This document shows, piece after piece, positions 10,993 through 29,682 of a stretch of 64,000 bases of DNA. The position numbers and the translations under genes are program-made. The notes under the pieces were generated by a model. It had not been told where the DNA came from, did no database searches, and saw nothing but the letters and a program-made list of their open reading frames with translations. The stretch lies in the IMG/VR virus record IMGVR_UViG_3300026484_000007, positions 208,603 to 272,602 of that record. One strand, 5' to 3'. How positions within the stretch are numbered: position 1 is the stretch's first letter; every line of letters starts with the position of its first letter.

Positions 10993-11724
10993 ATGTATTT
11001 AGCGTTAATGATCGAAGAATCATTTAATGAATTTCTTCAAAAAAATAATCTTCCTCAAACTACTTTAGAAGAAACCCACTATTTAAAAACCGGAAAAAAT
11101 CCTGGTTCTTTTAATTTAATTGAAGAAGGAGCTTTAGCTCGAGGAGCTGGGCTTGGGGCTCTTGTAGGTACTGCTGCGGTAGGAACTGCTCTTGGTATGG
11201 ATCATAGTCACATGCATGACATGCGCGACGCTTACGATTTCGCTCATAATGATGAAACTGGATTAGAAAATTCAAAAATAAATCAAGGGATTAAAGATGC
11301 TTTAAAATCAGATAATGAAACTGAATTTAAAGACAATAATGGAGAAGCTCCAAAAGATAAACCAGATTTAATTGATTCTGCGGAAGAAAGAAAGAAAATC
11401 GATGAATTCGTGAAAAACTGGAATGCGGAACATAAAGACCATCCATTGTCGACTAACGACATTATTAGTAAATACAATATGACTCAAAATAAAGAATTTA
11501 CTCAACTTCAAAGCAGAATCGATAATGCAGATTTAAATAAATCTAAAGCATTCCAATCTAATTGGGATAGTCTAAAACAAGGCGTTGGTAATCTTTGGAG
11601 TGGTTCTAAAGAAGGGCTTAACGATAAAGCGCTTGGAGCATTAAAAGTTGGTGGAGCAGCAATTGGTGGTGGAGCAGCAATTGGTGCAACATTAGGTGGA
11701 ATTCTTGGAAATAATAGAAGATAA
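10993..11724 (+). CDS. glycine-zipper virion-like protein (paralog family)
   Basis: IEES and IEEG motifs, N-terminal GAGLGALVG segment, C-terminal GGAAIGGGAAIGATLGG. Confidence 0.6.
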   Translation: MYLALMIEESFNEFLQKNNLPQTTLEETHYLKTGKNPGSFNLIEEGALARGAGLGALVGTAAVGTALGMDHSHMHDMRDAYDFAHNDETGLENSKINQGIKDALKSDNETEFKDNNGEAPKDKPDLIDSAEERKKIDEFVKNWNAEHKDHPLSTNDIISKYNMTQNKEFTQLQSRIDNADLNKSKAFQSNWDSLKQGVGNLWSGSKEGLNDKALGALKVGGAAIGGGAAIGATLGGILGNNRR

Positions 11725-11773
11725 TAGAAGATAATATAAAATAAAAATAAAAATTTTATAAAAGGAAGCGAAT

Positions 11774-13126
11774 ATGGCTTATGTTTTTAAAAAAGACAAA
11801 AACGGTAAATTAAAATTGATTAAACCATCAACCTCGGCTACCTCAACGACCGACAAAAGTGATCTTTTAAAGATCACTAATTCTCATAATTCTCATACTT
11901 CACTCAAAAGAACAATTGAGGAAAATTCATCTGCTATTTTAGAAGTTCCTATAGAAAAAGAAACCGAAAAATTTATCGAGACTCGAGACTGGGTAATTCC
12001 AAAAAAATTCATGATGCCAGATTGGGTAGAAAAAAATTTAAAAGACTTTAAAGATCAAGCAAGAGAAATTATCTCAAACGCAGACGAATCTTCTATAGAT
12101 TCAATTAATCCTAAAATTAAAAAATTAATTGAAGAATTAATTCTTGATAATAAAGTTAAACCTAAGTATCCTTTAAATAAAAAGACTCTTGGAAAATTAT
12201 CGAATGAAATGTGGAAAGTCTTCGGTGAAGATGAATTCATGTATCGATATTGGATACTACAAGAAGCTGGATTTTTTCTAAGTACTTTTAAACCATCTGG
12301 ATTTGAACCTGAGGCTCTACAATTACCTGAAAAATTCGTTAAAAGAAAAGACGCATTATTAAAAGAATTTGAAAAACGAGTTAAAGAACACGGTAAAGAT
12401 AAAGCGGTAGCTTGGATTGATAAAGAATTTAATAATTTAACCAACGAGGTAATCGATTACTGGGAAGAAAAAGGTATTAACGTTGTAGATATGATTAGAT
12501 CAGGAGCAAGAGGTGGTCCAGCGGATATTAGAAAAATGCTTGTTGCTGTTGGGTTAAGTATTGATAGTTCAGGAAAACCAAACGACGTTATTATGACGTC
12601 ACAAATCGAAGGTTTATCTCAAACTCAATTCTTTCATTATTCTTCACAAGCAATTATGGCATTATATGCAAAATCTTCAGAAACTGCTGTTCCAGGTTAT
12701 CTTGCAAGAAAATTAAGTACAGTTGCGGACGCGGTAAATCTTTCAGAAGTTGAAGATTGTAAAACGAAGAGATTTTTGGAAGTAACAGTTCTTGATTCAG
12801 ATGTTCTTAATGCGTTAGATGGTAGAGTATTGCATACAGGTAAAGTTATTGATTCTGAAAAAGATACTAATTTAATTGGTAAAAAAATTAAAATTAGATC
12901 GCCTTTATATTGTAAGGCAACTGATGGTATATGCGCTACATGTTATAATAAAAAAATTATTCAGAAAATGAATTGGCAGCCTGGAGAAAAAATTGGGTTG
13001 CATGCAGCTACAACTCTTGGAGATCAAGCATTAGTAAACTTAACACTTAAAAAATCTCATGTTGGTCTTTCATTAAATATGGAAACCGTAGATTTAGAAA
13101 AAGATATTTTTCAATTCGCAGAGTGA
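11774..13126 (+). CDS. RNA polymerase beta' subunit, middle fragment (bridge helix, Zn site, trigger loop)
   Basis: MIRSGARG, EGLSQTQFF, ETAVPGYLARKL, EDC, IRSPLYC...GICATCY, GEKIGLHAATTLGD...LTLKKSHVG. Confidence 0.9.
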   Translation: MAYVFKKDKNGKLKLIKPSTSATSTTDKSDLLKITNSHNSHTSLKRTIEENSSAILEVPIEKETEKFIETRDWVIPKKFMMPDWVEKNLKDFKDQAREIISNADESSIDSINPKIKKLIEELILDNKVKPKYPLNKKTLGKLSNEMWKVFGEDEFMYRYWILQEAGFFLSTFKPSGFEPEALQLPEKFVKRKDALLKEFEKRVKEHGKDKAVAWIDKEFNNLTNEVIDYWEEKGINVVDMIRSGARGGPADIRKMLVAVGLSIDSSGKPNDVIMTSQIEGLSQTQFFHYSSQAIMALYAKSSETAVPGYLARKLSTVADAVNLSEVEDCKTKRFLEVTVLDSDVLNALDGRVLHTGKVIDSEKDTNLIGKKIKIRSPLYCKATDGICATCYNKKIIQKMNWQPGEKIGLHAATTLGDQALVNLTLKKSHVGLSLNMETVDLEKDIFQFAE

Positions 13127-13164
13127 TCTTTTTTAGATCACTCTCTAGCTTTTTTTGTCATTAG
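13119..13164 (+). terminator. terminator on a GATC palindrome, with GTCATTAG tail
   Basis: AGAGTGATCTTTTTTAGATCACTCT...TTTTTTTGTCATTAG. Confidence 0.65.
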
Positions 13165-13176
13165 ATAATTTTTCCT

Positions 13177-13317
13177 GAAAACTCGTGATCTTAAAACGTT
13201 GAGCTTCATTAGATATCTAAAGATATATACGAGTTCTAAAATTTATAAAACCGTTTTAGAACTCGTATATATCCTTAGCATCGAAAAAAGATGCTACTTG
13301 AAAAATCAAAGTTTTTC
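13177..13317. repeat. ~140-bp dispersed palindromic element, copy A
   Basis: GAAAACTCGTGATC..AAAACGTTG..GATATATACGAGTTCTAAAA..TTTTAGAACTCGTATATATC..GATGCTAC..AGTTTTTC. Confidence 0.85.
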
Positions 13318-13372
13318 TTTTTCATTTTTTAAAAAATTGAATTTTTTAAACGAAGCCAAAAAAGGATTTTTT

Positions 13373-14464
13373 ATGAGCGCGGCAAGCACAACGAGAGTGA
13401 TAAATTTAAACAGATCAATCTTTTATCTTAATCAATCTTGTGTAAAAGAAATTCATGAATCTTCAATGTTAATTGAAGAAATTTCAAGTAAAGAAATAAT
13501 TTCAAAAATAAGATCATTTATGCCTAATTTAGATAATAAAATTGCTAAGCAATTTAATAATATATATAGAATTTTATCTAATGCGTTAGCATCTAAAAAA
13601 GATCTTGAAAGAATAAAAAAGATCAATGATGAGCAAATGAAAGCCATCGAAAAATATTTAAAAAAGAATGGTATAAATACTAAAAAATTAAAAGATAGAC
13701 TTAAAGAGAAAAAACAATTAACTCCAACCGATTTAGATTTAATCATCGAGATGGGATTAATTGAATTAAAACACACAACTGCGAAAGATTTTATTGAAGT
13801 CGTAGCTTTCGTTTTAGTAGCTTTTATTTTAAATACTTTTATTATTTATTCTATACTTGATCTTATATTTTTCATCAATCCATTGGCTAATTATAGTCAA
13901 GCTATGATGGTAGCTGTTTCAATTGGAGCAGTACTTTCAGCACCATTCGTTGAAGAAGCTGGTAAACGAGTAAGTATTGAAAGAAAAAAAGGTTTACTGT
14001 ATATTATAGGTTTTAATATTGCTGAATATACTTCTTATGTTTCTGCAGCTGCAGGAGCAGGTCTTGGATACATGATAATTATGATGATTGTTCGATTGTT
14101 ACCGGTTGCAATGCATTTCTCAAATTATAGTATTCATCAAAAAGGTGATATTGATCAAAAAATAGCAGATAAGTATAAAATTTCTACTGAAAGAGATTTC
14201 AGACAAGACGCTCAACGAATAGCAATGACAATACATAGATTTTGGAATATTGGATTAATATTTTTAGCTCCACTTGCAGGTTGGGCAAATTCTTATTTTA
14301 GCAATAAATTTCCTGTGAAAAAAATTGAAGAAAAAATTGAACCAAGATCATATTTAAACGAAATTCAAAAATTCTTTAAAGAAAAATCTAAAACTTTAAA
14401 ATACATTAATGCTAAAAAAGTAATCGAAAAAAATATCAAAAAAAATATCAAAAAGGATAAATAA
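13373..14464 (+). CDS. PrsW/M82-like intramembrane glutamic protease with soluble N-terminal extension
   Basis: APFVEEAGK, GFNIAE, AMHF and IHRFWN motifs in TM segments. AAGGA RBS before ATG 13373; the track's start at 13199 lies inside the repeat. Confidence 0.65.
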   Translation: MSAASTTRVINLNRSIFYLNQSCVKEIHESSMLIEEISSKEIISKIRSFMPNLDNKIAKQFNNIYRILSNALASKKDLERIKKINDEQMKAIEKYLKKNGINTKKLKDRLKEKKQLTPTDLDLIIEMGLIELKHTTAKDFIEVVAFVLVAFILNTFIIYSILDLIFFINPLANYSQAMMVAVSIGAVLSAPFVEEAGKRVSIERKKGLLYIIGFNIAEYTSYVSAAAGAGLGYMIIMMIVRLLPVAMHFSNYSIHQKGDIDQKIADKYKISTERDFRQDAQRIAMTIHRFWNIGLIFLAPLAGWANSYFSNKFPVKKIEEKIEPRSYLNEIQKFFKEKSKTLKYINAKKVIEKNIKKNIKKDK

Positions 14465-14736: not shown

Positions 14737-14746
14737 AGGATAAAAT

Positions 14747-15154
14747 ATGGCTAATAAAAATTATACAGTTGGCCTTGATAAAAAATATTTAGATCTAGTT
14801 GACGCAGATCTAACTCCAGAAAATCAAAGATTTTTAAATGATTACGTTGCTAAAAAATTAAGAATGATAGATAACACTATCATCGCAAATCATCTTAAAA
14901 AAATGGATCAAGAAGCTTCTCATTATAAAAATCTTGATAACTTTGAAAAACAAGAGATAATTAATTCCGAAAGATGGAAAAATCCATTGATCGGTGCAAC
15001 TATTGGAGGAGCTCTTGGTTTTGGACTTACTGATGTAATCAGTGGAAATCCTACGACCGATGGAATATTTGGCGCTCTTGGGTTAGGAGTTGGAGCTTAT
15101 CAAGGTAAGAAATATACTGATTTTAAATTAAAAAGGCAAGGATTGATAAAATGA
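14747..15154 (+). CDS. glycine-zipper membrane-type protein
   Basis: GATIGGALGFG and GALGLGVGAY. Confidence 0.65.
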   Translation: MANKNYTVGLDKKYLDLVDADLTPENQRFLNDYVAKKLRMIDNTIIANHLKKMDQEASHYKNLDNFEKQEIINSERWKNPLIGATIGGALGFGLTDVISGNPTTDGIFGALGLGVGAYQGKKYTDFKLKRQGLIK

Positions 15155-15894
15155 AACGAAGAAATTATTTTAATTATTTAAAAGGATCTGCAAAAGATCT
15201 TTTAGAAGAAAATGATCGTTATCGAGCGTTCTATCCCACTTCCACTGCCGCTGCCGCTCCACAAAGATCAATTTGGTCGGATATGAAAAACGGCGCAAAA
15301 AATCTTGGGAATAGCATAGTAAATTCTGCTAGTAAATTTGGATCTAAAATAACTAATGACCCAAAAATTGCTGCAGCTACAGGAGCAGCGATAGGTGGAG
15401 CTCTTCATCTTTACGATGTTCATGATGCAAAATCTGATTTATCTGATCTTATGGGCAAAAATTTTGATGCAGAAAAAATTAATAAAGATACATTCAATAG
15501 CAATTATGAGCAATACAAAGATCTTTATAATAAAGAAGGTATTAATAAATTTGATGCGAATAACGATGGATACTTAGATAAAAACGAACTTCATAAACTT
15601 TATAATACATATAAAAATGATACAAGTTGGTTCCCGTGGTGGAATGATGCAGATGATAAAATCAGTGCGGCTAAAGAATATTATGATTATATTCAAAAAA
15701 CTCCAGCAATGGATTTTAATAAAGATGGAATTGTAGATTCTAATGACACTAAAGCAATGAAAGATGTTGATCGTGTCGTTAATAGTAGTTTACCTGCGAA
15801 CTTAATGGGTGGTGCTGCAATTGGAGGAGCTCTTGGATATGGAACTAATAAACTTAATTCAAAACTTAATTCAAAATTTGGAGGACATTCATGA
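15151..15894 (+). CDS. glycine-zipper protein with two EF-hand-like loops
   Basis: GAAIGG at both ends; DANNDGYLDKNE and DFNKDGIVDSND. Confidence 0.65.
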   Translation: MKRRNYFNYLKGSAKDLLEENDRYRAFYPTSTAAAAPQRSIWSDMKNGAKNLGNSIVNSASKFGSKITNDPKIAAATGAAIGGALHLYDVHDAKSDLSDLMGKNFDAEKINKDTFNSNYEQYKDLYNKEGINKFDANNDGYLDKNELHKLYNTYKNDTSWFPWWNDADDKISAAKEYYDYIQKTPAMDFNKDGIVDSNDTKAMKDVDRVVNSSLPANLMGGAAIGGALGYGTNKLNSKLNSKFGGHS

Positions 15895-16658
15895 AAAATA
15901 TAAAAAAGACAAGAACGCTTAATTATTTAAATGAGGCATCTAATAGAGATCTTTCAATTGCTTTAACTGGATTAGGTTTTGGAATTGGTGGAGCCGCTCT
16001 TGGCGACTCAATATATGATGCTCACTTAGATCATTATAATTCCGAATTCCAAAAACAATTTTCCGATATTAATGCCACCAAAGATCAATTATTGAATGAA
16101 AAATTTGGTGATCCTGAAAATAATAAAGAAGCTCTTCAATCATATCAAGATCAATACAATAAAATAAAATTTGCTGATTTTAATAAAGATGGTTTCGTTG
16201 ATGAACGAGAATACAACAAAGCACTTGAAAATTATAAAAATTATATTAACAGCGGAGGTAATAATCCATTCTCTGATAATTATAAAAATTTAGATTATAA
16301 ACCAGATACAGTAAAACAATTAAATACTTATAAAAATTTATTACATGATAAAGATTTTGTATCTAAATTCGATGTAAATCAAGATGGAACATTTAACGCA
16401 AGAGAATTACAGTTATTGAAAAAACTTCCAGAGTATCAAGACAGAATGAATTCTTTTGAATATCAACCATATTTATATGGAACTGCTGGAGCAATAGCGG
16501 GAATGAAATTAATGGATGCTGCGACTAGAGGCGAAAGTTCTGATAAAGATCGAATAAATTTTCCAAGTAATAGATTTGCTCCGTTTGGTGCTCCAAAAAG
16601 ACCAAACGAATCTCAAGAAATCGTAGATAAAGTTCCACTACCACCGATAGTAAAATAA
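15891..16658 (+). CDS. glycine-zipper protein with two EF-hand-like loops
   Basis: GLGFGIGGAALG; DFNKDGFVDERE and DVNQDGTFNARE; C-terminal GTAGAIAG. Confidence 0.65.
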   Translation: MKNIKKTRTLNYLNEASNRDLSIALTGLGFGIGGAALGDSIYDAHLDHYNSEFQKQFSDINATKDQLLNEKFGDPENNKEALQSYQDQYNKIKFADFNKDGFVDEREYNKALENYKNYINSGGNNPFSDNYKNLDYKPDTVKQLNTYKNLLHDKDFVSKFDVNQDGTFNARELQLLKKLPEYQDRMNSFEYQPYLYGTAGAIAGMKLMDAATRGESSDKDRINFPSNRFAPFGAPKRPNESQEIVDKVPLPPIVK

Positions 16659-16692
16659 AAAATTATATAAAATTTAAATCAAAGGAAAATCG

Positions 16693-17549: not shown

Positions 17550-17680
17550 GAAAACTTGAGTTTCCAGAACGTTGAGCTTCTATAGATATCTAAAGATATA
17601 TAGCAGTTCTAAAAATTTTAGAACTGCTTTTATATCGCTTGTATCTAAAAAAGATGCTACGTGGAAAATCAAAGTTTTTC
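17550..17680. repeat. ~140-bp dispersed palindromic element, copy B
   Basis: Same core, GCAGTTCTAAAA/TTTTAGAACTGC. Confidence 0.85.
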
Positions 17681-17741
17681 AAGTTTTAAATTTAAAAAAA
17701 TACAAAGAAAGAAAAAGAAAGAAAATTAAAAGGATAGTTAA

Positions 17742-19397
17742 ATGAAATTAGATCAATTATTAATGAAACAAAAAACATCTTTGAAAGACTCAGCATTTCC
17801 AGCTTTATTCGCTGGCGACGAAATTACTATAAGTTATTTACCTGAGATCGGAGCATCCGGAATAAATTTTATTAATAAATTAAGAAAGAAAAATATTTTC
17901 AATGAAGTTCTTATTTATCCATATTATACCCTTGGAGCGAAAAAAATTATTTCTAAAGATTACATTGCAGATTTTAAAAAATTAAATCCAAATATAAAGA
18001 CTGTTTATAAATTTAAAACTTTCATGAAAAACAGAGCAAACGTGATCGATCTAACTCCACTGATGGATCTTTTTTCGATCCTAATCAATCAGCAGCCAAA
18101 ATTTAAAGTTTTAAATGAAACGATTGATGCTATAAATAATTATTTTACTGAGAATGTATCTTCCCAAGATCCTACTGGAGAAAAACATTTTATTTTCGTG
18201 GATTGTAATTCTAAAAGCAATTTTAATTTCTTAGATTCTATTTATAGATTATTTAGAAAAAAAGCTTTCAAACTCAATCATGATCTTTTAAAGATCAAAG
18301 GTTTATTTGTAATAGCTTTAAACGAATCTGAAGAATTTGATATTTATCCATTAATCCATAAAAAAGAAAAACATTTAATCTTTCGACCTGATATTTATAG
18401 ATTAATCAAAAAAGATCTTACTGGGATCGAAGAAGAAGAAATAAACGAATTCGTTGATTCATATGAAAAAATCAATGAAGCTAGAAATAATATTTTAAAC
18501 ATTACTGATAAACTTTTAAATAAAATTGGGAAAGGATCTGCAAAAGATTCGAAAGAGACTGCAGACTTTCTAAATCAATTAGGAAATGCTAAAGAAAGAT
18601 TTGAAAACTACATCGATTTAATTTATCAAGAATTATCAAGTAATGATATTCCTGGAAATGATTATATAGAAAAACTTCATCGTTTATTTCCGAAAGACAC
18701 GACGGATCCAAAAAAGATCCAAAAGATTGAAAAATTAATTTCTTACATAGATGATCTTAATAAGATCTATAATGGATCAATTAAAATAAAAAAAGATTTA
18801 ATTAATAAATCTGCTGATATTTATTATGATCCAATGGAGATCGTTAAGTTAGATGAAATTTCTGTTTATAATAAGCAGAAAACAGAATTCGATGAAGTGC
18901 TAGATAAATCAATGTTTGATTTAATTAAAAGTATTGAGCGAGATAAAGATGCAGGAATTGAAGTTCTTGATATTAAAGTAGAAGTTCAAGACACTAATAA
19001 AAGTAGATTTAAAAAATACAAAGTTAAATTAAAGAATACTAAGTTCGGTAAAAAAACTCCATACGAAATAGAATTTCTTACTCCGTATCCTATCAAAGGA
19101 AAATATTTAAAAATAGGTGGAGTAAGATACATAATGTTAAATCAATTTATGGCTAAACCTATTTTAAAAATTAAGCCTAACATTGTAAGATTATATACTC
19201 ACTTCAGTACTTTCTCAGTAACTTTAAAAACTCATAAATATAATAATACTCAAGATTTCCACGAGATCTTAATGAAAGTTACTTCTAGTATAAAAGGATC
19301 TAAAATAGATTACGTCGAATCTACTAACAATGATCCGCGCGAAAAATATAAATTTTATATCGATAGAACTTTTATAGATAAAACTATAGAATTATAA
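17742..19397 (+). CDS. probable RNA polymerase beta subunit, N-terminal fragment with large extension
   Basis: PYPIKGKYLKIGGVRYIMLNQ resembles beta GTFxINGxERVxVSQ; directly precedes the main beta gene. Confidence 0.6.
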   Translation: MKLDQLLMKQKTSLKDSAFPALFAGDEITISYLPEIGASGINFINKLRKKNIFNEVLIYPYYTLGAKKIISKDYIADFKKLNPNIKTVYKFKTFMKNRANVIDLTPLMDLFSILINQQPKFKVLNETIDAINNYFTENVSSQDPTGEKHFIFVDCNSKSNFNFLDSIYRLFRKKAFKLNHDLLKIKGLFVIALNESEEFDIYPLIHKKEKHLIFRPDIYRLIKKDLTGIEEEEINEFVDSYEKINEARNNILNITDKLLNKIGKGSAKDSKETADFLNQLGNAKERFENYIDLIYQELSSNDIPGNDYIEKLHRLFPKDTTDPKKIQKIEKLISYIDDLNKIYNGSIKIKKDLINKSADIYYDPMEIVKLDEISVYNKQKTEFDEVLDKSMFDLIKSIERDKDAGIEVLDIKVEVQDTNKSRFKKYKVKLKNTKFGKKTPYEIEFLTPYPIKGKYLKIGGVRYIMLNQFMAKPILKIKPNIVRLYTHFSTFSVTLKTHKYNNTQDFHEILMKVTSSIKGSKIDYVESTNNDPREKYKFYIDRTFIDKTIEL

Positions 19398-19418
19398 ATT
19401 AATCATAAAGGACAAAAT

Positions 19419-22400
19419 ATGATCAAAAAAGATACGTCTGATGCTACATTAAAATTAAAATCTGCAAAATTTTATATAGATTTTCATAATGAAAAAAATA
19501 ATAAATTATTTTTTTATGAAGTTTATTCTAAGAAAAAAGGAACTGCTGGAGCAGAGCGTCTCGAATACGCTTATATGACTCCAGACGACGAAGTGATCTT
19601 TTACAAACCCATCGATGATATCGAAGAGCATGAAATACCAAAGAAAGATCTTCGAGAGTTTCTTCTTGGTAGAATTAATAGCATAGCGATGTTAAAATTA
19701 GGAGCTAGAGTTGATATTAAATCAAAATCTTCTAAACCTACTTTTAAAATTAAAGCGTTGAGCAATGAACCCGAAGTAATTCTTTTTGCTAGTATTATTT
19801 TAGGATTAAGACCTGCGCTAGATTTCATGGGAATAAAGTATAGTTTTAATAAGACTAAAGAAGGTTATAAATCTATAAAACTATCCACTCAAGATGGTAA
19901 AACTAAATATTTTAATATTTATGCTAACTCTTTATACGATGAATACGTTTTAAATGGAATGTCTTCTTTTATTAAGAAAATTGAATTCACTGAAGAAAAT
20001 TTATCTTCTAAAGATGTATTCATAACTTATTTCGATAATCGTTTTGGTAAAGGTTTATTTAATTCTTATAATCAAAAGTTAGTATCTTTTATAGATACAA
20101 CGACTGAGCAAATTTTAAGATCGTATGGTTATAGTACGGATCCATTAAAATTATTATGTATAACTATGCCTAAGAAAATACTAAACGAAGCAGTCGATGA
20201 TATCGATAATCTTGAAAATAAAAGAATTAGAATGGCTGAAAGTATTGCTCACTCAGCTTATAATGCAGTTTCGCAAGCTCTTGTAAAATTCAAGAAAGAA
20301 TCTAAATTAGATAACGTTAAATTACATATTCAAAAAGATTATATTATTAATAATCTTATTAACACTGGTATGGTTCAATGGAGTAATCCAGTTAACCCAT
20401 TAGAAGAATTAACTACTTCTGCAAAAATTACTAAAACTGGGGTTGGGAATCCATTAAAAGAACAGATCACTATAGACAAAAGGGATCTTAATGAAAGTTA
20501 TTTTGGAGTTGTATCTGCGACACATACTAATGAGTACGGTGGAATAGGTTTAAACCAAACTCTCGTAAATAAAATGATGATCAAAGATAGATTCGGAAGT
20601 ATTTTAATTAAAAAATTCCAAGATACTAATCCTTTTGAAATACTAAGTCCAATTGAAAGTATTGCTCCATTTATGGATACAGATGATACTACTAGAAAAG
20701 TTATGGGGAATCAGCAAACCTCACAATTCATTCAAGTTAAAAATCCAGATGTTCCTCTTGTTCAAACTGGTTTTGAAGCTTATATACCTTATATAGTATC
20801 TGATAGATTTGCAATGAAAGCTAAAAAACCTGGAACTGTTAAATTAGAAAAAGACTATATTATAATGAAATACAATGATGGTTCTGAAGAAATCTTTAGT
20901 ACTAAACCCACTAAAGCGAGAACTAAAAGAGGTCTTTATATTCCAATTGAATATAACGTTCTTGTAAAAGATGGTCAAAAAGTAAAAGAAGGAGAAATCC
21001 TTGCAGCAACTAATTCTTTAAAACACGGAAAATTAGGTATAGGAAAAAATTTAGTAGTCGCAGAAATGTCTTATCGAGGTATGAATTACGAAGATGGTTG
21101 GGTAATATGCGAAGACCTTAAAGAAAAATATCAAAGTTCTTTATATGAAAAAATTACTATAATTATTCCAGAAGGTGCTAAGATTCAAGATTTTAATATT
21201 GAATTAAATAAAAACACTAAACCTGGAGAAAAATTAATTTCGTATGTTACAAACGCAACTGAGTCTTTAGAATTCGATGAAGAAAATAGTATTACTGATG
21301 AAAATACTGATGATTTAAGTACAGGTAAAGAGATTAGAGGTAATACAGTAACTTACTATAGTATCGGTGGACAAATTGCAGATTTTGTAATAAAATTAAA
21401 TTCTACTAAAATTGATAAAAAAATTATAGAAAAATTTAAATTTCAAAATTCAGAAATTGAAAAAAAATTAAAGATTTGCGAAAAACTCAAAAATGAAATT
21501 AATAAATTAGATTGTAGAGATAACATTGAACATCTTGAAGCTCTTGAAGTTGGTGGACATAAAGCAAATAAAATGGAGCCAGAAGGAGCGATTATTGAAG
21601 TCTATATCGAAACAGAAAATCCAATCAGAAACGGATCAAAATTTACTTTAGCGAGTACTGGTGGTAAAGGTACTGTACAATACATTATTGATAAAGATAA
21701 AAAACCTTATACAAAAGAAACTGGATTAGAAATTGATTTTATTGCGACTCCGTTGTCAATCATTTCAAGAAAAAACCCAAGTATTATTTTACAATTGTAT
21801 CTTGGAAAAGTAATTTATTTTCTAAATAAAAAAGTTGAAGAATTAGCTAAAGAAAATAAAATTTCTTCGGTTAGAACTTTAATTACTAAAGTATTTGAAA
21901 GAATTGATAAATCAGATGATAAAGTTTATCTAAATCAATTAAAAGGATTCTTAAAAAATAAAGATGATTTTCTTAAAAAATATATTTTAAAACATGATCC
22001 TTTAAATAACCCAGCTTTCCCAGCAATTATGCCTCCATTCGGAAGTAAATTAAGTACGAAAGATATCGAAGATGCTGCAGATATTCTTGGAATTCCTTTA
22101 CAAGAACATGTAATAATTCCAGAAGAAGATAATAAAGAGACTAAATATAAAGTTACTGTTGGAATTATGCCAGTATTTTATTTAGAACATTTTCCAAAAG
22201 CTATGTCAGGGGTAAGAGGAAGTATTAATGTTAAAAATCAATTAACGACTGGACAAGGTCGTGCCGGAACTAAAGAAGGAAACGGAGCAATTAAACTTGG
22301 TTTATATGATATGTTTTCCGTTACATCAAGACGAGCAAATAAGTTCATTAAAGAAATGTGGGCAGTAAAATCAGATGATTACGAAGCGAAAAAAGAACTT

Positions 22401-22538
22401 CGAAAGAAAATCATTAAATCAGCCGAAACTGGCGAAGAAATAAATGTTTCTGATATTGAAGTAAAACCAGAAGATATTACTACCAAAAAATTGATTGAAG
22501 CATATTTTTATGGAGCATGTTTGCAGCCACGTTTCTAA
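19419..22538 (+). CDS. DNA-directed RNA polymerase beta subunit, main fragment
   Basis: NKRIR, NPLEEL, RDLNESYFGVV..THTNEYGGIGL, DDTTRKVMGNQQTSQ, GKNLVVA..GMNYEDG, GSKF..GGKGTV, PLSIISRKN, GAIKLG. Confidence 0.93.
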   Translation: MIKKDTSDATLKLKSAKFYIDFHNEKNNKLFFYEVYSKKKGTAGAERLEYAYMTPDDEVIFYKPIDDIEEHEIPKKDLREFLLGRINSIAMLKLGARVDIKSKSSKPTFKIKALSNEPEVILFASIILGLRPALDFMGIKYSFNKTKEGYKSIKLSTQDGKTKYFNIYANSLYDEYVLNGMSSFIKKIEFTEENLSSKDVFITYFDNRFGKGLFNSYNQKLVSFIDTTTEQILRSYGYSTDPLKLLCITMPKKILNEAVDDIDNLENKRIRMAESIAHSAYNAVSQALVKFKKESKLDNVKLHIQKDYIINNLINTGMVQWSNPVNPLEELTTSAKITKTGVGNPLKEQITIDKRDLNESYFGVVSATHTNEYGGIGLNQTLVNKMMIKDRFGSILIKKFQDTNPFEILSPIESIAPFMDTDDTTRKVMGNQQTSQFIQVKNPDVPLVQTGFEAYIPYIVSDRFAMKAKKPGTVKLEKDYIIMKYNDGSEEIFSTKPTKARTKRGLYIPIEYNVLVKDGQKVKEGEILAATNSLKHGKLGIGKNLVVAEMSYRGMNYEDGWVICEDLKEKYQSSLYEKITIIIPEGAKIQDFNIELNKNTKPGEKLISYVTNATESLEFDEENSITDENTDDLSTGKEIRGNTVTYYSIGGQIADFVIKLNSTKIDKKIIEKFKFQNSEIEKKLKICEKLKNEINKLDCRDNIEHLEALEVGGHKANKMEPEGAIIEVYIETENPIRNGSKFTLASTGGKGTVQYIIDKDKKPYTKETGLEIDFIATPLSIISRKNPSIILQLYLGKVIYFLNKKVEELAKENKISSVRTLITKVFERIDKSDDKVYLNQLKGFLKNKDDFLKKYILKHDPLNNPAFPAIMPPFGSKLSTKDIEDAADILGIPLQEHVIIPEEDNKETKYKVTVGIMPVFYLEHFPKAMSGVRGSINVKNQLTTGQGRAGTKEGNGAIKLGLYDMFSVTSRRANKFIKEMWAVKSDDYEAKKELRKKIIKSAETGEEINVSDIEVKPEDITTKKLIEAYFYGACLQPRF

Positions 22539-24880: not shown

Positions 24881-25714
24881 ATGTCAAAATATTCTGAAAT
24901 CTTAGGGCAACTTATTAATGAAAATATAAGCAAAGCTCATGATTATATCACAAATCAATTAATTATGGAACATCTTTTAAAAACTGGTAAAGTTACAATT
25001 GAAGAAGCTCAATTATTCAATCAAATGACGTATTCAGTGCTTTATGAAAGTTCTCATTTAATGGTACCAACAGTTGAAGAAATTCAAGAAGCGATGATGC
25101 CACCTGCGCCAGCTCAAATGGGTGCGCCAGCTCCAGGAGCAGCAGGAGAGGAACCAGTTCCAGCAATGAACGAAGCGCCAGCTCCAGCTCCAGCAGATGG
25201 AATTCCAAATGAGGGAGAACCAAGTCCTCAAGAAATTCAAGCTGCAATCGATGGTGGAGAAGCTCCAGCAGGTTTAAAAACATTAGTTGATCCAGAAACA
25301 GGAGAAAAATTTCAATTTGATCCAACAAGCGGATCTGTAATGCCTGAAGCTAAAGACGACATGCCAGTACCAGGAGATACAATGGGAGATTCTGCAGAAC
25401 CAGTTCCAGCCCCAGAAGCAGAACCAGCAGCTCCAACAGATGAACCAGCAGCTCCAACTGATCAAGCAGGTTTACCTAAAAAAGACGTAAGTGCTAGCGA
25501 AGGAAATGTTGAAGAATCTACTGCTGCAGAAGCTACAGCAGCTACTGCGGAAGAATCTAAAAAAGATCAAAATATTGAAGAATCTGCGAATGTAGACGCT
25601 TCTGCAAAAGAAGAAGCAAAAGAAGAAGCAAAAGAAGAAGCAAAAGAAGAAGCAAAAGAAGAATTAAATGAAAATGAATTACTAGTTCAATCATTAATGA
25701 ATCTTATAAAATAA
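24881..25714 (+). CDS. acidic Pro/Ala-rich prohead core/scaffold-like protein
   Basis: Many (I/L/V)xE motifs, (EEAK)4 repeat, N-terminal domain paralogous to the next gene. Confidence 0.5.
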   Translation: MSKYSEILGQLINENISKAHDYITNQLIMEHLLKTGKVTIEEAQLFNQMTYSVLYESSHLMVPTVEEIQEAMMPPAPAQMGAPAPGAAGEEPVPAMNEAPAPAPADGIPNEGEPSPQEIQAAIDGGEAPAGLKTLVDPETGEKFQFDPTSGSVMPEAKDDMPVPGDTMGDSAEPVPAPEAEPAAPTDEPAAPTDQAGLPKKDVSASEGNVEESTAAEATAATAEESKKDQNIEESANVDASAKEEAKEEAKEEAKEEAKEELNENELLVQSLMNLIK

Positions 25715-25745
25715 GATAAAATAATATTTTTAAAAGGATTAAATT

Positions 25746-26108
25746 ATGGAAAACAATCCTACTATAGTAGATAAGGTACTTTCGAAGATTATCTTCGAAA
25801 ACCTTATTAAAAACGGAAAAGTTACTTTAGAAGAAGCTCAAATCATCAATGAAGCAATTATCGAAATCGTTGATAGATATAATCATACTATTATTGAAGA
25901 AACTGCAAAAATCAATACTTTAATGAATGTTCAAAATTCTCAGCCTCAGCAACCTCAACAACCTCAAATTAATGAAGCTGAAATGAATAGAATACTTCAA
26001 AGTATTGAGGAAGCAGCAATCGAAGCTACACAAAACAATCAAAAAATTATTGAAGAATCTGAAGAAATGTCAATTGCAGAAAAACTTGCATCTAAAGTTT
26101 TAAAATAA
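25746..26108 (+). CDS. paralog of preceding gene; prohead core-like
   Basis: ENLIKNGKVTLEEAQIIN vs EHLLKTGKVTIEEAQLFN; repeated IEE motifs. Confidence 0.55.
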   Translation: MENNPTIVDKVLSKIIFENLIKNGKVTLEEAQIINEAIIEIVDRYNHTIIEETAKINTLMNVQNSQPQQPQQPQINEAEMNRILQSIEEAAIEATQNNQKIIEESEEMSIAEKLASKVLK

Positions 26109-26144
26109 TTTTTAAAAAAATAAAAATCAAATTAAGGAGTACTA

Positions 26145-26653
26145 ATGAATTACTTTGAAAGAGTAAAATTACATGAAATTTGCGAAAGTGTAAAAGAAAC
26201 TTATCTTTTAAATAGCATCGAAGAAAATGCTAATGAAATCGAAGTTCTAAGAACTAAAAAATTCTTAACTGAAACATTTAATACAATTGAAAAATTATTA
26301 ATTGAAGAAGCAATTGCTGATGGTGTAAAAAAAGCAGCAATTATTGGAGCAGCAGGGTTAGCTGGAACAGCTGCAGGTTATGAACTTGGTCATGCTGCTG
26401 ATGCAGGGGAATTAGCAGCGGGAAAGTAATTGATCCAGCTGCCCCAGAAGAAGTTGTAGTTGATAAAAATTTAATTACTGCAGATGACGTTGAAAAGCGA
26501 GAGATGAATGCTTTTGCGTTATCTGACTTATACAAACTTGCTCAGCAAAATCCTAATGCTGTTTTATATGGAGGAGCGTTAGGAACAGCTGGGTTAGCTT
26601 CTGGTGCAGTCGCTGCTCAAGCAATGAATTCTCAGAATCCAAGAAGTAGATAA
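26145..26653 (+). CDS. glycine-zipper protein expressed as a 94-aa form and a ~169-aa -1 frameshift form
   Basis: 0-frame stops at 26429 right after G GGA AAG. The -1 frame stays open for 75 codons to TAA 26651-26653 and encodes the family's C-terminal GGALGTAGLASG zipper. Confidence 0.65.
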
Positions 26654-26667
26654 AAATTATAAAAATA

Positions 26668-26715
26668 TGGAGTTGTGATCTTTTTTAGATCGCTCTCCAG
26701 TTTTTTTGTCGTTAG
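26668..26715 (+). terminator. terminator on a GATC palindrome, with GTCGTTAG tail
   Basis: TGGAG..GATCTTTTTTAGATC..CTCCA then T7. Confidence 0.65.
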
Positions 26716-26750
26716 AAAAAATTCTGAAAAAATTCTGAAAAAAATTATAA

Positions 26751-26890
26751 AAAACTTGAGATTCGCGGACGTTGCGCTTCTGTAGATATCTAAAGATATA
26801 TAGCAGTTCTAAAATTATCAGAGTGGTTTTAGAACTCGTATATATCTTTGTGTATCCAAAATAGATGCTACATAGAAAATCAAGTTTTTC
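26751..26890. repeat. ~140-bp dispersed palindromic element, copy C
   Basis: Same core. Confidence 0.85.
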
Positions 26891-27033
26891 AATGTTTTCT
26901 TTTGATTGATTTTGATTAAGATTAATTTTAATTTTAATTTTAATTTTAATTAAATTTTATTTATAGCCAAAATCGATCTAACGAAGATAAAAATCTTTAA
27001 TTTAAAAATAATATTATATACTAAGGAGAAATA

Positions 27034-27876
27034 ATGAGTCTTTATACTTTAATTGAAGAAGCTTATAATTCTAAAGAAAAAGCTCTCGCGACAATGGGAC
27101 TTGGTGCTCTTGGAGCAGGAGTAGCTGCATATCATGGTCATAGCGTTGATCAATTAGATAATTTGATAGATAAAGAAACTGGATTAACCGATTTAGAAGC
27201 GAATAACTTTAGAGCAGACGCTGCTTTATCAAAAGATGGAATACTAGGGAAAGTGAAAGGAGTTTTTGATTTATCTACTGGTAAATTAGATCCTCGAGAA
27301 TTAGCTAAAGCTTATCAAACAGATCCAGATGTTAAAAATTTAATAGATGAAAAACTAGATCCTGAAAGCAAAAAATATATATTAAAAATTATGAATCTTC
27401 AAGATAAATTCAATGATCATCTTTTTCATATTGAGAATGATAAAAAAGAATTACCTGGGGTATTTAATGGTCATGCAAACGCAACTGCTTACGGAGCAGC
27501 AGGATTAATGGGTGGGGCAGCTCTTGGAGCAGCAGCGACATCAGATACGCTTAATCCTAAAAAAGAAACTAAGCAGTTAAAGAAAATTGAAAAAGATTAT
27601 GAAAAAATTTTAAAAGATAAGCAAAAGCTAGCAGAAGAGCTTGAAAAAGAAAAAGCTTTACAATCGACTGTAAAAGATTATCATTTAGAGTCGACTCCAG
27701 CGCCTCCAGCGCCTCAAGCGCCTCAAGCTCAACCAGCGCCAGTTCAGATACCATTTCATCCAAACGTTCAATATTATTATGATCCATTAAATCCATATGG
27801 TTTACCAGCTCAATCTACACAACCTACCCAACCTATTCAACCTATTCAACCTATTCAACCTACTTTATTAAGATAA
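27034..27876 (+). CDS. glycine-zipper virion-like protein with Pro/Gln tail
   Basis: LIEEA, GLGALGAG, GAAGLMGGAALGAA. Confidence 0.6.
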   Translation: MSLYTLIEEAYNSKEKALATMGLGALGAGVAAYHGHSVDQLDNLIDKETGLTDLEANNFRADAALSKDGILGKVKGVFDLSTGKLDPRELAKAYQTDPDVKNLIDEKLDPESKKYILKIMNLQDKFNDHLFHIENDKKELPGVFNGHANATAYGAAGLMGGAALGAAATSDTLNPKKETKQLKKIEKDYEKILKDKQKLAEELEKEKALQSTVKDYHLESTPAPPAPQAPQAQPAPVQIPFHPNVQYYYDPLNPYGLPAQSTQPTQPIQPIQPIQPTLLR

Positions 27877-27894
27877 CTTTTAAAGGAATTAATT

Positions 27895-29682
27895 ATGAAA
27901 AACGAGAAAAAAGAAATGAATTTTAAACCAAAAAAATTTAGAGAAATCGAAGAAAGTTTTTTAAAAAATCTTGGATTATATGGTGGATTGGGAGCAGCAG
28001 GAGCTGCTGCTGCAATCTATGGAAACGATCATTGGGATCCGAATGCGACTCATACTGAAGTTGTTGAAAAAGTAAAACATGGAGTAGGCGCGACTGGGGA
28101 TAAAGCTGCATGGGACGCGCATGTAAAAAAGGAAAATGAATTTATAAATAATGAAACAGCTTCCGATTTTAATAAATTAATGAAGGGTAATTTTAGTAAT
28201 TCTAAGAACGATTACCAGGAATACCTAAAACAAACAGAGACTATCGATGATTTTAGAAAACTGACACCAGAACAGCAAAAACATTATATTCTTAGCTTAG
28301 CGGGATATGATTTCGATCATCCTGAAGCTTCTAAAAATACTTTAGCATTAAAGTTTGCTCAAGATTTTTATGCTCAAGAATTAGCTAAACAGTATCCTGA
28401 GGCTAAAAACCCTGAAATTTTTCAAACTATGGCTAAGAATTTCTTTGATAATAATAATACTAATGATACTTGGATGTTTAATAAAGATAATAAATTCGTT
28501 CAAGCTCAAGCAGGAGCTGAAAATTCATTCAACGATGCTTTAAAATTAAACAGTCCTAAAATTGATTTTAAAAATGATTGGACTACTTTTACTCAAAATA
28601 AAAATCAAGATTATATGAACATGGGAAGAATTTTATCAACAGTTGATGGAAATGGTAATGATAATGGCAACAATTTAGTAAATTTTGGAGATTTTATTAA
28701 AAAAGATGGAACGTTTGATTTCAATAAAGCTTCGCAATTTTATAATGGAGATGTTAATAAAGTTAAAGAATTATATAAAACATTTATCGATGCCGCTGAT
28801 ACTGACGCAGGCGATACGTTTTCAGGAGACAATATTAAAAATAAAAATCCTTACCCAAATCCGAATGGATTTTTTGATCATATTTCAAATTATTTTTCAA
28901 AAGGTAATATGCCTTTTAATAAAATTAATTCCATTGATGATTTAAAAGCTTGGAATGAAAAACTTTTAGAGACACAACCAAATGCTGCAAAAATATCAAA
29001 TTATGATGCTGTTTATAGTGGATTTTTTAATCCTGATACTATGCATCCAGCTGGAACATTAAACAGTTCTCAAGGGACTGATCTTGATTCTAATTTAGAT
29101 TTTTCAAAATTAACTTTAAAAAGCGATACTACGACACCGTCACCTGTAAAAACAGATTTTGATCAATTCAATAAAAAATATGAATCCTATAAACCATACG
29201 GAGACCAGGCAAATATTTTTATAAAAAACTGGAGTAATTCTACTGTCTTTGATGGACAAGGTAATGTAAAAGATACAGATTCTGTAGTTAATCCAAATGA
29301 AAAGTGGAGAGAATTTGATTATGATAAAAATGGTAAGATAGATGAAAAAGATTTTGAAGCTTTTAAAAAGTCGGACGAATATCATAAAAAATTAGAAGAA
29401 TACAGAAACAAACATCATTCTGAATACGAAAAAAAATTTTTAGAAAATTATAAAGGCAAAATTCCCGAAAAATATAATCCGGGGCATGATGAAATAATCA
29501 AAGAAAAGAAAGAAGTAAAAGGTATTACTACTAAACCGATGGCTGGTCTTGTAGGAGCTGGAGCTGGACTTGCTGCAGCAGGTATAAGTTCTGCAATCGC
29601 TAACGCAGCAAAAAAACCTAATCATTCGCAGTTCCCAGCTCATCCAACGTATTCGCCGTATCCAGCATATCCTCATAGATAA
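27895..29682 (+). CDS. large glycine-zipper protein with EF-hand-like loop
   Basis: IEES, GGLGAAGAAA, DYDKNGKIDEKD, GLVGAGAGLAAAG. Confidence 0.6.
   Translation: MKNEKKEMNFKPKKFREIEESFLKNLGLYGGLGAAGAAAAIYGNDHWDPNATHTEVVEKVKHGVGATGDKAAWDAHVKKENEFINNETASDFNKLMKGNFSNSKNDYQEYLKQTETIDDFRKLTPEQQKHYILSLAGYDFDHPEASKNTLALKFAQDFYAQELAKQYPEAKNPEIFQTMAKNFFDNNNTNDTWMFNKDNKFVQAQAGAENSFNDALKLNSPKIDFKNDWTTFTQNKNQDYMNMGRILSTVDGNGNDNGNNLVNFGDFIKKDGTFDFNKASQFYNGDVNKVKELYKTFIDAADTDAGDTFSGDNIKNKNPYPNPNGFFDHISNYFSKGNMPFNKINSIDDLKAWNEKLLETQPNAAKISNYDAVYSGFFNPDTMHPAGTLNSSQGTDLDSNLDFSKLTLKSDTTTPSPVKTDFDQFNKKYESYKPYGDQANIFIKNWSNSTVFDGQGNVKDTDSVVNPNEKWREFDYDKNGKIDEKDFEAFKKSDEYHKKLEEYRNKHHSEYEKKFLENYKGKIPEKYNPGHDEIIKEKKEVKGITTKPMAGLVGAGAGLAAAGISSAIANAAKKPNHSQFPAHPTYSPYPAYPHR

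What the first reader, a model, noticed from the sequence alone, without database searches (positions are those of the whole stretch)
10993..29682. Expanded family of double glycine-zipper proteins, several with EF-hand-like Ca loops
Seen: ORFs at 10993, 14747, 15151, 15891, 26145, 27034 and 27895 mostly share the layout short leader ending (I/L)xE, then a Gly/Ala hydrophobic segment usually followed by His/Asp residues, a variable soluble domain, and a second Gly zipper. Three carry DxNxDGxxD-type loops. Known: T4-type prohead proteases cleave after (I/L)xE, and Gly zippers mediate membrane helix oligomerisation. Inference: capsid-internal proteins matured by the head protease and ejected to form a Ca-responsive membrane channel or compartment, with the variable domain looped to one side.
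Basis: partly seen in the sequence, partly recalled or inferred. Interest (0 to 1): 0.65.

Follow-up and report, generated by a model that had tools for sequence, protein, structure and literature searches.

The report
Leader-tagged glycine-zipper phage head proteins
An uncultured 273-kb jumbo phage from hydrothermal vents has at least 15 orphan genes sharing a short leader that ends in a head-protease cutting motif and is followed by glycine-zipper helices; they are most likely capsid-packed proteins that enter the host and act at its membrane.

Summary
All seven ORFs exist as described. Eight more with the same signature lie elsewhere in the 272,602-bp phage contig, next to the head protease, major capsid protein and large terminase genes.

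- **Signature:** a leader ending (L/I)-x-E before a small residue, then zipper 1 followed by a His/Asp patch, a variable domain, and zipper 2 followed by a Lys/Arg patch.
- **Zipper segments:** 20 genes carry them, all on the + strand, against 0.55 expected from shuffles.
- **Leader motif:** [LI]EE[small] occurs 21 times in the first 60 residues of + strand genes (2.6 expected) and never in − strand genes.
- **Head module:** the phage encodes a gp21/gp175-type head protease, a T4-type portal and a gp23-like capsid protein that carries the same motif.
- **Calcium loops:** EF-hand loops are real (7 found, 0.26 expected).
- **Relatives:** a profile of the N-terminal module found none among 1.84 billion proteins.
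- **Frameshift:** ORF 26145 reaches its second zipper only through a −1 shift at G_GGA_AAG.

The nearest precedent is SPN3US gp47, a protease-processed ejection protein whose mature N-terminus is a membrane helix. Packaging and processing are well supported but indirect. A Ca-responsive channel is untested.

The parts
10993..11724 (+). w10993, 243 aa. Three leader sites (IEE|S 7-9, LEE|T 25-27, IEE|G 43-45), zipper 1 at 51-69 followed by DHSHMHD, zipper 2 at 219-239 followed by NNRR. It lies between the two halves of the virion-type RNA polymerase beta' gene.
14747..15154 (+). w14747, 135 aa. Compact zipper hairpin (81-95 and 106-118) with no leader site. Atypical member.
15151..15894 (+). w15151, 247 aa. 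Leader NYFNYL...LLEE|N, zipper 1 at 73-85 followed by HLYDVHD, two EF-hand loops (nt 15553-15588 and 15712-15747), zipper 2 at 218-232 followed by a Lys-rich tail.
15891..16658 (+). w15891, 255 aa. Leader LNYLNE|A, zipper 1 at 21-38 followed by DSIYDAHLDHY, two EF-hand/dockerin-like loops (nt 16176-16211 and 16371-16406), weak zipper 2 at 194-205, Pro-rich tail. Paralogue of w15151.
26145..26429 (+). w26145, 94 aa in the zero frame. Leader with five candidate sites, among them IEE|N at 25-27 and IEE|A at 53-55. Zipper 1 at 64-79 followed by ELGHAAD.
26420..26653 (+). In-phase slippery heptamer G_GGA_AAG (26420-26426) two codons before the stop. The -1 frame stays open to 26653 and encodes the missing zipper 2 (YGGALGTAGLASGAVAA) followed by a basic end (PRSR). 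This is either a programmed -1 frameshift or a 1-nt assembly error.
27034..27876 (+). w27034, 280 aa. 9-residue leader MSLYTLIEE|A, zipper 1 at 17-33 followed by HGHSVD, zipper 2 at 150-170 followed by a KK-rich coiled segment, then a Pro/Gln/Tyr-rich tail.
27895..29682 (+). w27895, 595 aa. Leader ...FREIEE|S, zipper 1 at 26-43 followed by NDHWD, a 500-aa orphan domain with one EF-hand loop (nt 29317-29352), zipper 2 at 549-566 followed by AAKK, then a Pro/Tyr tail.
24881..26097 (+). Two acidic genes in the same operon as w26145: w24881 (277 aa) and w25746 (120 aa, given here only up to 26097). They carry 2 and 4 [LI]EE[small] sites and are scaffold- or core-like candidate protease substrates.
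8825..13126 (+). Operon holding the RNA polymerase beta' N-part (w8825), an acidic repeat protein (w10273), w10993 and the beta' C-part (w11774, with TIEE|N at residue 48). A hairpin terminator follows at 13122.
17742..22538 (+). w17742 (551 aa; no family match, role not established) and the RNA polymerase beta-like gene w19419. The best cultured match of w19419 includes phiR1-37 g099, which is annotated as a phage structural protein, so this is the virion-type set. A second RNA polymerase set lies on the - strand of the genome.
32202..36713 (+). 1503-aa protein with four zipper-like segments and no leader site. It is comparable to the giant zipper-bearing tape-measure-like ORFs of phiR1-37 (g083), JD-Fnp7 and PBS1.
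39095..41458 (+). T4-type portal protein (Pfam Portal_T4, 41.7 bits).

Best explanation
These genes form a lineage-specific set of at least 15 capsid-internal proteins of an uncultured T4-/phiKZ-related jumbo phage.

Proposed mechanism:
1. The short N-terminal leader acts like a T4 capsid targeting sequence. It brings the protein into the prohead core and is removed by the phage's gp21/gp175-type head protease after (L/I)-x-E.
2. Cleavage leaves a new N-terminus a few residues before a marginally hydrophobic glycine-zipper helix.
3. That helix and a second zipper near the C-terminus form a split helical hairpin that frames a variable cargo domain. Some cargo domains carry EF-hand Ca loops.
4. 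The proteins leave the head with the DNA and the virion RNA polymerase. The zipper hairpins then self-associate in the host envelope. The N-terminus and the basic patch after zipper 2 would face the cytoplasm. The His/Asp patch and the variable domain would face outward.

Shown here: the sequence signature, its statistical excess, its restriction to the late/structural strand, the head module genes, and the absence of relatives.

Inferred: packaging, cleavage, ejection, membrane insertion and topology.
For: - The signature recurs in 15 genes and is far above chance.
- [LI]EE[small] in the first 60 residues: 21 observed against 2.6 +/- 1.7 expected in + strand genes, and 0 against 2.9 in - strand genes. 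[LI]xE[small] has z 7.3. [SAG]xE is not enriched.
- Head protease g6204 matches phrog_207 (E 2e-19) and Peptidase_S80 (33.8 bits), and itself carries three such sites.
- The capsid protein g12513 (weak Gp23 match, PDB 7x30 at E 2e-6) has sites at residues 53-55 and 73-75.
- Family genes flank the protease (g7451, g9208), the capsid protein (g14343), the terminase (g197213, g200306, g201214) and the virion-type RNA polymerase genes.
- Leaders of 9-20 residues fit the 10-19-residue T4 capsid targeting sequences (PMC9026906).
- SPN3US gp47 is a virion protein cut by the head protease (site AVE-79 seen by mass spectrometry; maturation cleavage at ALE-111 expected by the authors). Its authors infer that it is ejected, and its mature N-terminus is a predicted membrane helix (PMC5694885).
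- The charge asymmetry is consistent: acidic/His after zipper 1 in 14 of 14 members, basic after zipper 2 in 9 of 11.
- In cultured relatives, zipper hairpins sit in giant tape-measure-like virion proteins.
Against: - There is no virion proteome, no expression data and no homologue with a known role.
- Pairwise similarity is weak, so common descent of all members is not proven.
- Zipper hydrophobicity is below a classical membrane-helix threshold.
- w14747 has no leader. In w15151, g7451 and g192536 the cleavage site lies 50-117 residues before the zipper.
- Fold and oligomer predictions were uninformative.
- The + strand also holds non-structural genes such as ribonucleotide reductase and primase, so strand is only a rough proxy for late or virion genes.
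Confidence: 0.45

Rival explanations
1. The proteins are prohead core or inner-body components only. They are packaged and processed, but the glycine zippers serve helix-helix packing inside the scaffold or inner body. There is no membrane role after ejection.
For: - g7451, the gene directly after the protease gene in the position of a scaffold gene, carries the zipper plus His/Asp module.
- The zippers are only marginally hydrophobic.
- Co-operonic acidic proteins carry many cleavage sites and look like scaffold.
- phiKZ and SPN3US have paralogous, protease-processed inner-body proteins (PMC9026906).
Against: - The conserved charge asymmetry, with basic residues after zipper 2 and acidic/His residues after zipper 1, resembles membrane topology signals.
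- EF-hand loops fit a Ca-rich extracytoplasmic location.
- SPN3US gp47 gives a precedent for membrane interaction, although its authors call this speculation.
- In relatives the zippers sit in tape-measure-like proteins.
Confidence: 0.25
2. The proteins are not virion proteins. They are made late and inserted into the producing cell's membrane, for example as SAR-like (signal-anchor-release) or holin-like lysis proteins, superinfection exclusion factors or envelope remodelling factors. The leader is then just a cytoplasmic N-terminus.
For: - Weakly hydrophobic Gly/Ala-rich segments behind basic N-termini resemble SAR domains.
- g200306 has a weak pesticin/T4-lysozyme-like C-domain (19.4 bits, below the cut-off).
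- The basic patch after zipper 2 fits the positive-inside rule for co-translational insertion.
- A multi-pass membrane protein with an EEAGKR motif (w13373) is co-operonic with several members.
Against: - This does not explain why the same (L/I)EE[small] motif also marks the N-termini of the protease, the capsid protein, an RNA polymerase subunit and soluble acidic proteins, and only on the + strand.
- Acidic EE directly before the hydrophobic segment is atypical for signal anchors.
- Fifteen lysis or exclusion proteins would be unprecedented.
- Members cluster with head genes.
Confidence: 0.2
3. The pattern is a compositional artefact: unrelated low-complexity Gly/Ala stretches and chance IEE tripeptides in an AT-rich genome.
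For: - Pairwise BLASTP E-values are mostly above 0.001.
- The only two non-self hits of the profile in the 1.84-billion-protein library are compositional.
Against: - Shuffle controls give 20 against 0.55 genes with zippers and 21 against 2.6 leader motifs, and both features are confined to one strand.
- Order, spacing and flanking charge are fixed across members.
- The profile finds all ten training modules, one weak second segment in g14343 (E 0.056) and nothing else in the 272-kb six-frame search. This is partly circular.
Confidence: 0.03

Closest known systems
SPN3US gp47 (giant Salmonella phage ejection protein)
   Same: It has an N-terminal propeptide removed by the prohead protease after x-x-Glu. 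A hydrophobic helix follows a few residues after the cut and is followed by acidic residues (read). The gene lies near virion RNA polymerase genes. Its authors infer that it is ejected and speculate that it contacts the host membrane. They also note highly diverged genes at the equivalent position in relatives (PMC5694885).
   Different: gp47 is a single gene, not at least 15. Its helix is classically hydrophobic rather than a Gly zipper, and it has no second zipper. Its propeptide is about 111 residues against 9-45 here. Its motif is A-x-E against (L/I)-x-E here. No sequence similarity was detected.
T4 internal proteins IPI-III and Alt, with a capsid targeting sequence cut by gp21
   Same: Both have a 10-19-residue N-terminal leader ending hydrophobic-x-Glu, removed by a gp21-family protease. 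Both are packaged in the head and injected with the DNA (PMC9026906). This phage has a T4-type portal, capsid protein and protease.
   Different: T4 internal proteins are soluble, have no zippers, and act against host nucleases or modify the host RNA polymerase. No homology was detected.
Glycine zipper 2TM / YMGG / Gly-zipper_Omp domains (PF05433, PF13441, PF13488; for example the lipoprotein SlyB)
   Same: Both have two GxxxGxxxG helices forming a hairpin. g193397 scores 27.3 bits on YMGG and w15151 gives weak hits.
   Different: All scores are below the Pfam cut-offs. There is no lipoprotein signal. Here the hairpin is split by inserts of 20-500 residues, and the genes are phage-encoded with a protease-site leader.
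Glycine-zipper membrane-depolarising effectors delivered by type VI/VII secretion (for example the LXG-T2 class, PMC12955049; Tse4, Ssp6 and TspA from my own knowledge)
   Same: These are proteins delivered from outside into a target cell envelope, where Gly zippers drive pore formation.
   Different: The delivery machine is different, there is no sequence relationship, and no activity was tested here.
Tape-measure-like giant virion proteins of phiR1-37 (g083), JD-Fnp7 and PBS1
   Same: They carry the same kind of Gly-zipper segments, in phages whose RNA polymerase is the nearest cultured match. The window's 1503-aa ORF 32202 is of this kind.
   Different: In those phages the zippers are concentrated in one giant protein plus at most one other ORF. 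Here they are also spread over about 15 small leader-tagged genes.

Membership tests
T4-type leader-bearing (capsid targeting sequence), protease-processed internal head proteins | The phage encodes a gp21-family prohead protease. | tested here: met
   g6204 matches phrog_207 (E 2e-19), phrog_3014 (E 9e-16) and Pfam Peptidase_S80 (33.8 bits against a 23.4 cut-off). tblastn finds T4-like cyanophage gp21 and phiR1-37 g079. PF03420 (S77) itself gave no match.
T4-type leader-bearing (capsid targeting sequence), protease-processed internal head proteins | A short N-terminal propeptide ending (L/I)-x-Glu. | tested here: met
   14 of 15 members have such a site before zipper 1, with the first site at residues 7-40. 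The motif is enriched only at N-termini of + strand genes.
T4-type leader-bearing (capsid targeting sequence), protease-processed internal head proteins | The protein is physically present in the head and cleaved at the site. | not testable with these tools
   The phage is uncultured and known only from hydrothermal vent metagenomes. No proteome exists.
T4-type leader-bearing (capsid targeting sequence), protease-processed internal head proteins | Sequence homology to T4 internal proteins or phiKZ/SPN3US inner-body proteins. | tested here: not met
   There is no PHROG or Pfam match. The profile finds nothing in phiR1-37, JD-Fnp7, S6 or PBS1 and nothing real among 1.84 billion proteins.
phiKZ/SPN3US-type processed head proteins | Cleavage motif (S/A/G)-x-Glu. 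| tested here: not met
   [SAG]xE[small] is not enriched (z -1.3 and -0.2 in + strand genes). The enriched motif has L or I at the third residue before the cut.
Glycine zipper 2TM / YMGG / Gly-zipper_Omp (Pfam) | Score at or above the Pfam gathering threshold. | tested here: not met
   The best score is g193397 at 27.3 bits against a 28.9 cut-off. The others score 8-18 bits.
Glycine zipper 2TM / YMGG / Gly-zipper_Omp (Pfam) | GxxxGxxxG helices in a pair. | tested here: met
   21 GxxxGxxxG matches fall in family members. Ten members have two or more zipper segments (eight by the stricter rule), and w26145 gains a second through the -1 frame.
EF-hand | Canonical 12-residue loop D-x-[DN]-x-[DN]-G-x-[ILV]-x-x-x-[DE], and a Pfam score over the cut-off. 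| tested here: met
   Five loops occur in w15151, w15891 and w27895. EF-hand_5 scores 26.2 against 25.9 for w15151. The other models fall just under their cut-offs. Ca binding itself is not testable here.
Dockerin type I | Two Ca-loop/helix repeats close together in one ~60-residue module. | tested here: not met
   w15891 passes the Dockerin_1 score (29.7 against 22.9), but its two loops are 65 residues apart, starting at residues 96 and 161. These are EF-hand-like loops, not a dockerin module.
SAR (signal-anchor-release) endolysin or pinholin | An N-terminal weakly hydrophobic Gly/Ala-rich domain joined to a muramidase domain. | tested here: inconclusive
   Only g200306 has a weak lysozyme-like match (Pesticin, 19.4 bits against a 25.8 cut-off). 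No other member has a lytic domain.
Programmed -1 frameshift of the lambda G/GT type | An in-phase X_XXY_YYZ heptamer with an open -1 frame encoding a meaningful extension. | tested here: met
   G_GGA_AAG lies at 26420-26426, one of only two in-phase copies in 280 genes. The -1 frame encodes zipper 2. A downstream structure is present (z -3.1) but begins about 30 nt away, so its role is inconclusive.

The most novel reading that the evidence does not exclude
The phage packs a multi-component, self-assembling membrane apparatus in its head: 15 or more zipper proteins with different outward-facing domains, some of them Ca-binding. It fires this apparatus into the host together with its virion RNA polymerase. 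There the zipper hairpins co-assemble into a phage-built channel or membrane-bounded early-infection compartment. No chimallin homologue was detected, so this would be an independent counterpart of the early-infection vesicle described for nucleus-forming phages (own knowledge).
Probability: 0.1. Interest if true: 0.85.

Novelty: new variant of a known kind. Interest (0 to 1): 0.55.

Why it matters
How giant phages get DNA and tens of megadaltons of ejected protein across the host envelope, and what those proteins do, is largely unknown. SPN3US gp47 is a single, unexplained example of a protease-matured ejection protein with a membrane helix.

This phage offers a whole set of such proteins. 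They have a clean, recognisable signature: leader, cut site, zipper, charge patches and swappable middle domains. About 5% of its genes carry it, and nothing like it turned up among 1.84 billion proteins.

The signature gives concrete constructs for testing capsid targeting, protease specificity ((L/I)-x-E against (S/A/G)-x-E) and membrane insertion by marginally hydrophobic zipper hairpins. It also gives a search pattern for similar proteins in other uncultured jumbo phages.

Tried and rejected
- **Homology searches found only the phage's own proteins.** These were the word search with w15151, with w27895 residues 60-540 and with w13373, scans of viral contigs with w27895 and with the capsid protein, and tblastn of the capsid protein against phages.
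- **The N-module profile found nothing elsewhere.** It gave no hit in four cultured jumbo phages. In the 1.84-billion-protein library it found only this phage's own proteins plus two compositional repeat proteins.
- **The ESM Atlas gave no usable neighbours**.
- **Single-sequence AlphaFold2 models were too poor to use or to fold-search.** w15891 had pLDDT 37 and g193397 had pLDDT 58.
- **Complex prediction returned 'no answer'** for four copies of mature g193397 (score 0.00). This is no evidence either way.
- **Other blanks:** PF03420 in the phage's own genome, phiKZ chimallin gp54 in the phage's own genome (not proof of absence), host inference through NrdA in bacterial genomes, and Rfam for the intergenic repeat.
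- **The joined frameshift product was never built or submitted.** The two frames were handled separately by reference (window:26145-26426 and window:26402-26650).
- **Rejected readings:** a dockerin reading for w15891, because the loop spacing is wrong, and phiKZ-type (S/A/G)-x-E as the cleavage motif.

Full report
**Context**

The window is the last 64 kb of a 272,602-bp IMG/VR virus contig that CheckV rates 97% complete, with 27% G+C. Public runs that hold it are hydrothermal vent metagenomes from at least two studies. All large ORFs in the window lie on the + strand.

The region of the finding is interleaved with split multisubunit RNA polymerase genes:
- The beta'-like genes are w8825 and w11774, and the beta-like gene is w19419. 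w17742 lies just upstream of w19419 but matched no family.
- The best cultured matches of w19419 include phiR1-37 g099, which its record annotates as a phage structural protein, and a 'virion-associated' subunit of a Pseudomonas phage.
- A second, diverged polymerase set lies in the long − strand block. The window set is therefore most likely the virion polymerase.
- Downstream lie a virion structural protein (w36730) and a T4-type portal (w39095; Portal_T4, 41.7 bits).

The seven ORFs exist as described.
- Six have an (L/I)-x-E site followed by a small residue, a few residues before a Gly/Ala-rich helix.
- All seven have an acidic, mostly His-containing dodecamer after that helix.
- Five have a clear second zipper near the C-terminus, usually followed by Lys/Arg.
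- w15891 has a weak second zipper. w14747 has no leader and is a compact hairpin.
- Five canonical EF-hand loops occur in w15151 (two), w15891 (two) and w27895 (one). Genome-wide there are 7 against 0.26 expected.
- Pfam EF-hand_5 passes its cut-off for w15151, and Dockerin_1 passes for w15891. The two loops of w15891 are 65 residues apart, so it is not a dockerin module.

**The set is larger than reported**

A scan of the whole genome finds zipper-like segments in 20 of 280 genes. All 20 lie on the + strand, and none of the 146 − strand genes has one, against 0.55 ± 0.65 in shuffles. Strict GxxxGxxxG occurs 36 times against 9.4 ± 3.2 expected, with 21 of those in the family.

Eight further genes carry the leader, zipper and acidic-patch signature:
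- g7451 and g9208 lie directly after the head protease gene.
- g14343 lies directly after the capsid protein gene.
- g192536 and g193397 lie elsewhere in the + strand block, a few kilobases upstream of the terminase gene.
- g197213, g200306 and g201214 flank the large terminase gene.

A leader of the type NYLN...LL-x-IEE also occurs on + strand genes without zippers: g196584, g194031, g195792 and w29695.

Pairwise similarity between members is weak and confined to the modules. A 53-position profile of the N-terminal module (A1) retrieves the ten training modules, one weak second segment in g14343 (E 0.056), and nothing else in the six-frame genome. That test is partly circular.

**Evidence for processing by the head protease**

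- g6204 is a head maturation protease (phrog_207 at E 2e-19, Peptidase_S80 at 33.8 bits, tblastn to T4-like gp21 homologues).
- g12513 is the capsid protein (weak Gp23 match, PDB 7x30 at E 2e-6). It carries LEE|S and LEE|A at residues 53-55 and 73-75. That is about where I recall T4 gp23 being cut (near residue 65; not checked here).
- The protease itself has three such sites.

| Motif | Gene set | Region | Observed | Expected | z |
|---|---|---|---|---|---|
| [LI]EE[SAGNT] | + strand | first 60 residues | 21 | 2.6 ± 1.7 | 10.9 |
| [LI]EE[SAGNT] | − strand | first 60 residues | 0 | 2.9 | −1.7 |
| [LI]xE[small] | + strand | first 60 residues | 67 | 28.6 | 7.3 |
| [SAG]xE[small] (phiKZ/SPN3US type) | + strand | first 60 residues | 18 | 24.5 | −1.3 |

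The genome therefore carries a T4-type cleavage signature at the N-termini of its late or structural genes. The zipper proteins are its most frequent carriers.

Leader lengths of 9-20 residues to the first site match the 10-19-residue capsid targeting sequences of T4 internal proteins (PMC9026906).

**Precedent**

In the giant phage SPN3US, gp47 is a head protein cut by the prohead protease. Mass spectrometry shows a cut at AVE-79, and the authors expect the maturation cleavage at ALE-111. They infer that gp47 is an ejection protein. They note that its mature fragment starts with a predicted transmembrane helix and speculate that the helix contacts the host membrane (PMC5694885).

Reading the gene shows ALE, then five residues, then a hydrophobic helix, then acidic residues. 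This is the same layout as here, but with a classical helix, no second zipper, and a single gene.

In phiR1-37, JD-Fnp7 and PBS1, zipper hairpins sit in one giant ORF each. The phiR1-37 ORF is annotated as a putative tape measure. Each phage has at most one other zipper ORF. The window's 1503-aa ORF 32202 is of that kind.

**No relatives**

- Pfam and PHROGs give no family for any member.
- The word search finds only the query itself.
- The profile finds nothing in four cultured jumbo phages.
- In 1.84 billion representative proteins it finds only this phage's own proteins plus two compositional repeat proteins.

**Mechanism and its limits**

The zippers are marginally hydrophobic (mean Kyte-Doolittle score 0.9-1.6). 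That suits proteins that must stay soluble in the producing cell and in the capsid yet can enter a bilayer as oligomers.

The fixed charge pattern predicts a hairpin with the trimmed N-terminus and the basic C-flank on one side, and the variable domain on the other. EF-hand loops in that domain fit a Ca-rich, extracytoplasmic side.

All of this is inference. Fold and oligomer predictions gave nothing. An inner-core role without any membrane function, or insertion into the producing cell's own membrane, remain live rivals. 'Ca-responsive channel' goes beyond the evidence.

**A frameshift**

- ORF 26145 ends GCG GGA AAG TAA. G_GGA_AAG (26420-26426) is a canonical −1 slippery heptamer and one of only two in-phase copies in the genome.
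- The −1 frame runs on to 26653 and supplies the missing second zipper and a basic end.
- The downstream RNA is structured (z −3.1), but the structure begins about 30 nt away.
- A programmed frameshift would give a one-zipper and a two-zipper isoform.
- Those places were not sent to any search tool afterwards. The joined product was neither built nor searched; each frame was searched by reference on its own.

**Verdict**

This is a real, statistically solid and sequence-orphan set of leader-tagged glycine-zipper proteins. They are best read as capsid-internal or ejection proteins processed by a T4-type head protease. It is a new variant of a known kind, whose nearest precedent is SPN3US gp47. 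Their action at the membrane is plausible but untested.

Noticed in passing
window 26420-26653: An in-phase G_GGA_AAG heptamer lies two codons before the stop of ORF 26145. The -1 frame encodes the second glycine zipper. This is a candidate programmed -1 frameshift, or a 1-nt assembly error.
   Followed up: partly
window 13178-13336, 17551-17699, 26751-26900, 41496-41790 (two copies), 49389-49520, 55978-56074; about 30 copies genome-wide: An interspersed intergenic repeat of about 140 nt occurs in both orientations. It contains a 21-bp perfect hairpin plus a second hairpin (fold z -8.1) and matches no Rfam family. The annotated TTG start of ORF 13199 lies inside one copy, so the true start is probably Met59 (nt 13373).
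   Followed up: partly
window 11859, 13123, 17465, 22602, 24815, 26675, 46618, 46647, 49312; 29 copies genome-wide: A conserved palindromic hairpin GTGATC-N7-GATCAC followed by T-runs marks operon ends and is a likely terminator. The copy at 22602 lies inside the predicted signal peptide of ORF 22575, so that start codon or signal peptide is doubtful.
   Followed up: partly
window 13373-14464: A multi-pass membrane protein with an EEAGKR motif is co-operonic with w14747, w15151 and w15891. It has only a weak PrsW intramembrane protease match (E 0.16) and no homologues in the word search.
   Followed up: partly
window 10273-10974 and 24881-25714: Two highly acidic low-complexity proteins (DLTEPT repeats; Pro/Ala-rich with EAKE repeats) carry internal [LI]EE sites. 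They could be scaffold-like or inner-body-like proteins.
   Followed up: no
genome 200306-201199 (L006:12306-13196): This zipper-bearing member has a leader YINYLNE|T and a weak pesticin/T4-lysozyme-like C-domain (19.4 bits, below the cut-off). It may be a virion-associated or SAR-type muramidase.
   Followed up: partly
genome 9848-12283 (L002) and 69678-70532: Two further proteins carry a canonical EF-hand loop. g9848 (811 aa) lies between the protease and capsid protein genes.
   Followed up: no
window 27034-27876, 27895-29682, 15891-16658; genome 201214-202800: Four members have Pro/Gln/Tyr-rich, probably disordered C-terminal tails after zipper 2.
   Followed up: no
window 49547-52100: Two radical SAM genes (phrog_1802) lie downstream of the structural block. 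Class I ribonucleotide reductase genes lie at 2623-6283.
   Followed up: no
They were left out of all later searches.
   Followed up: no
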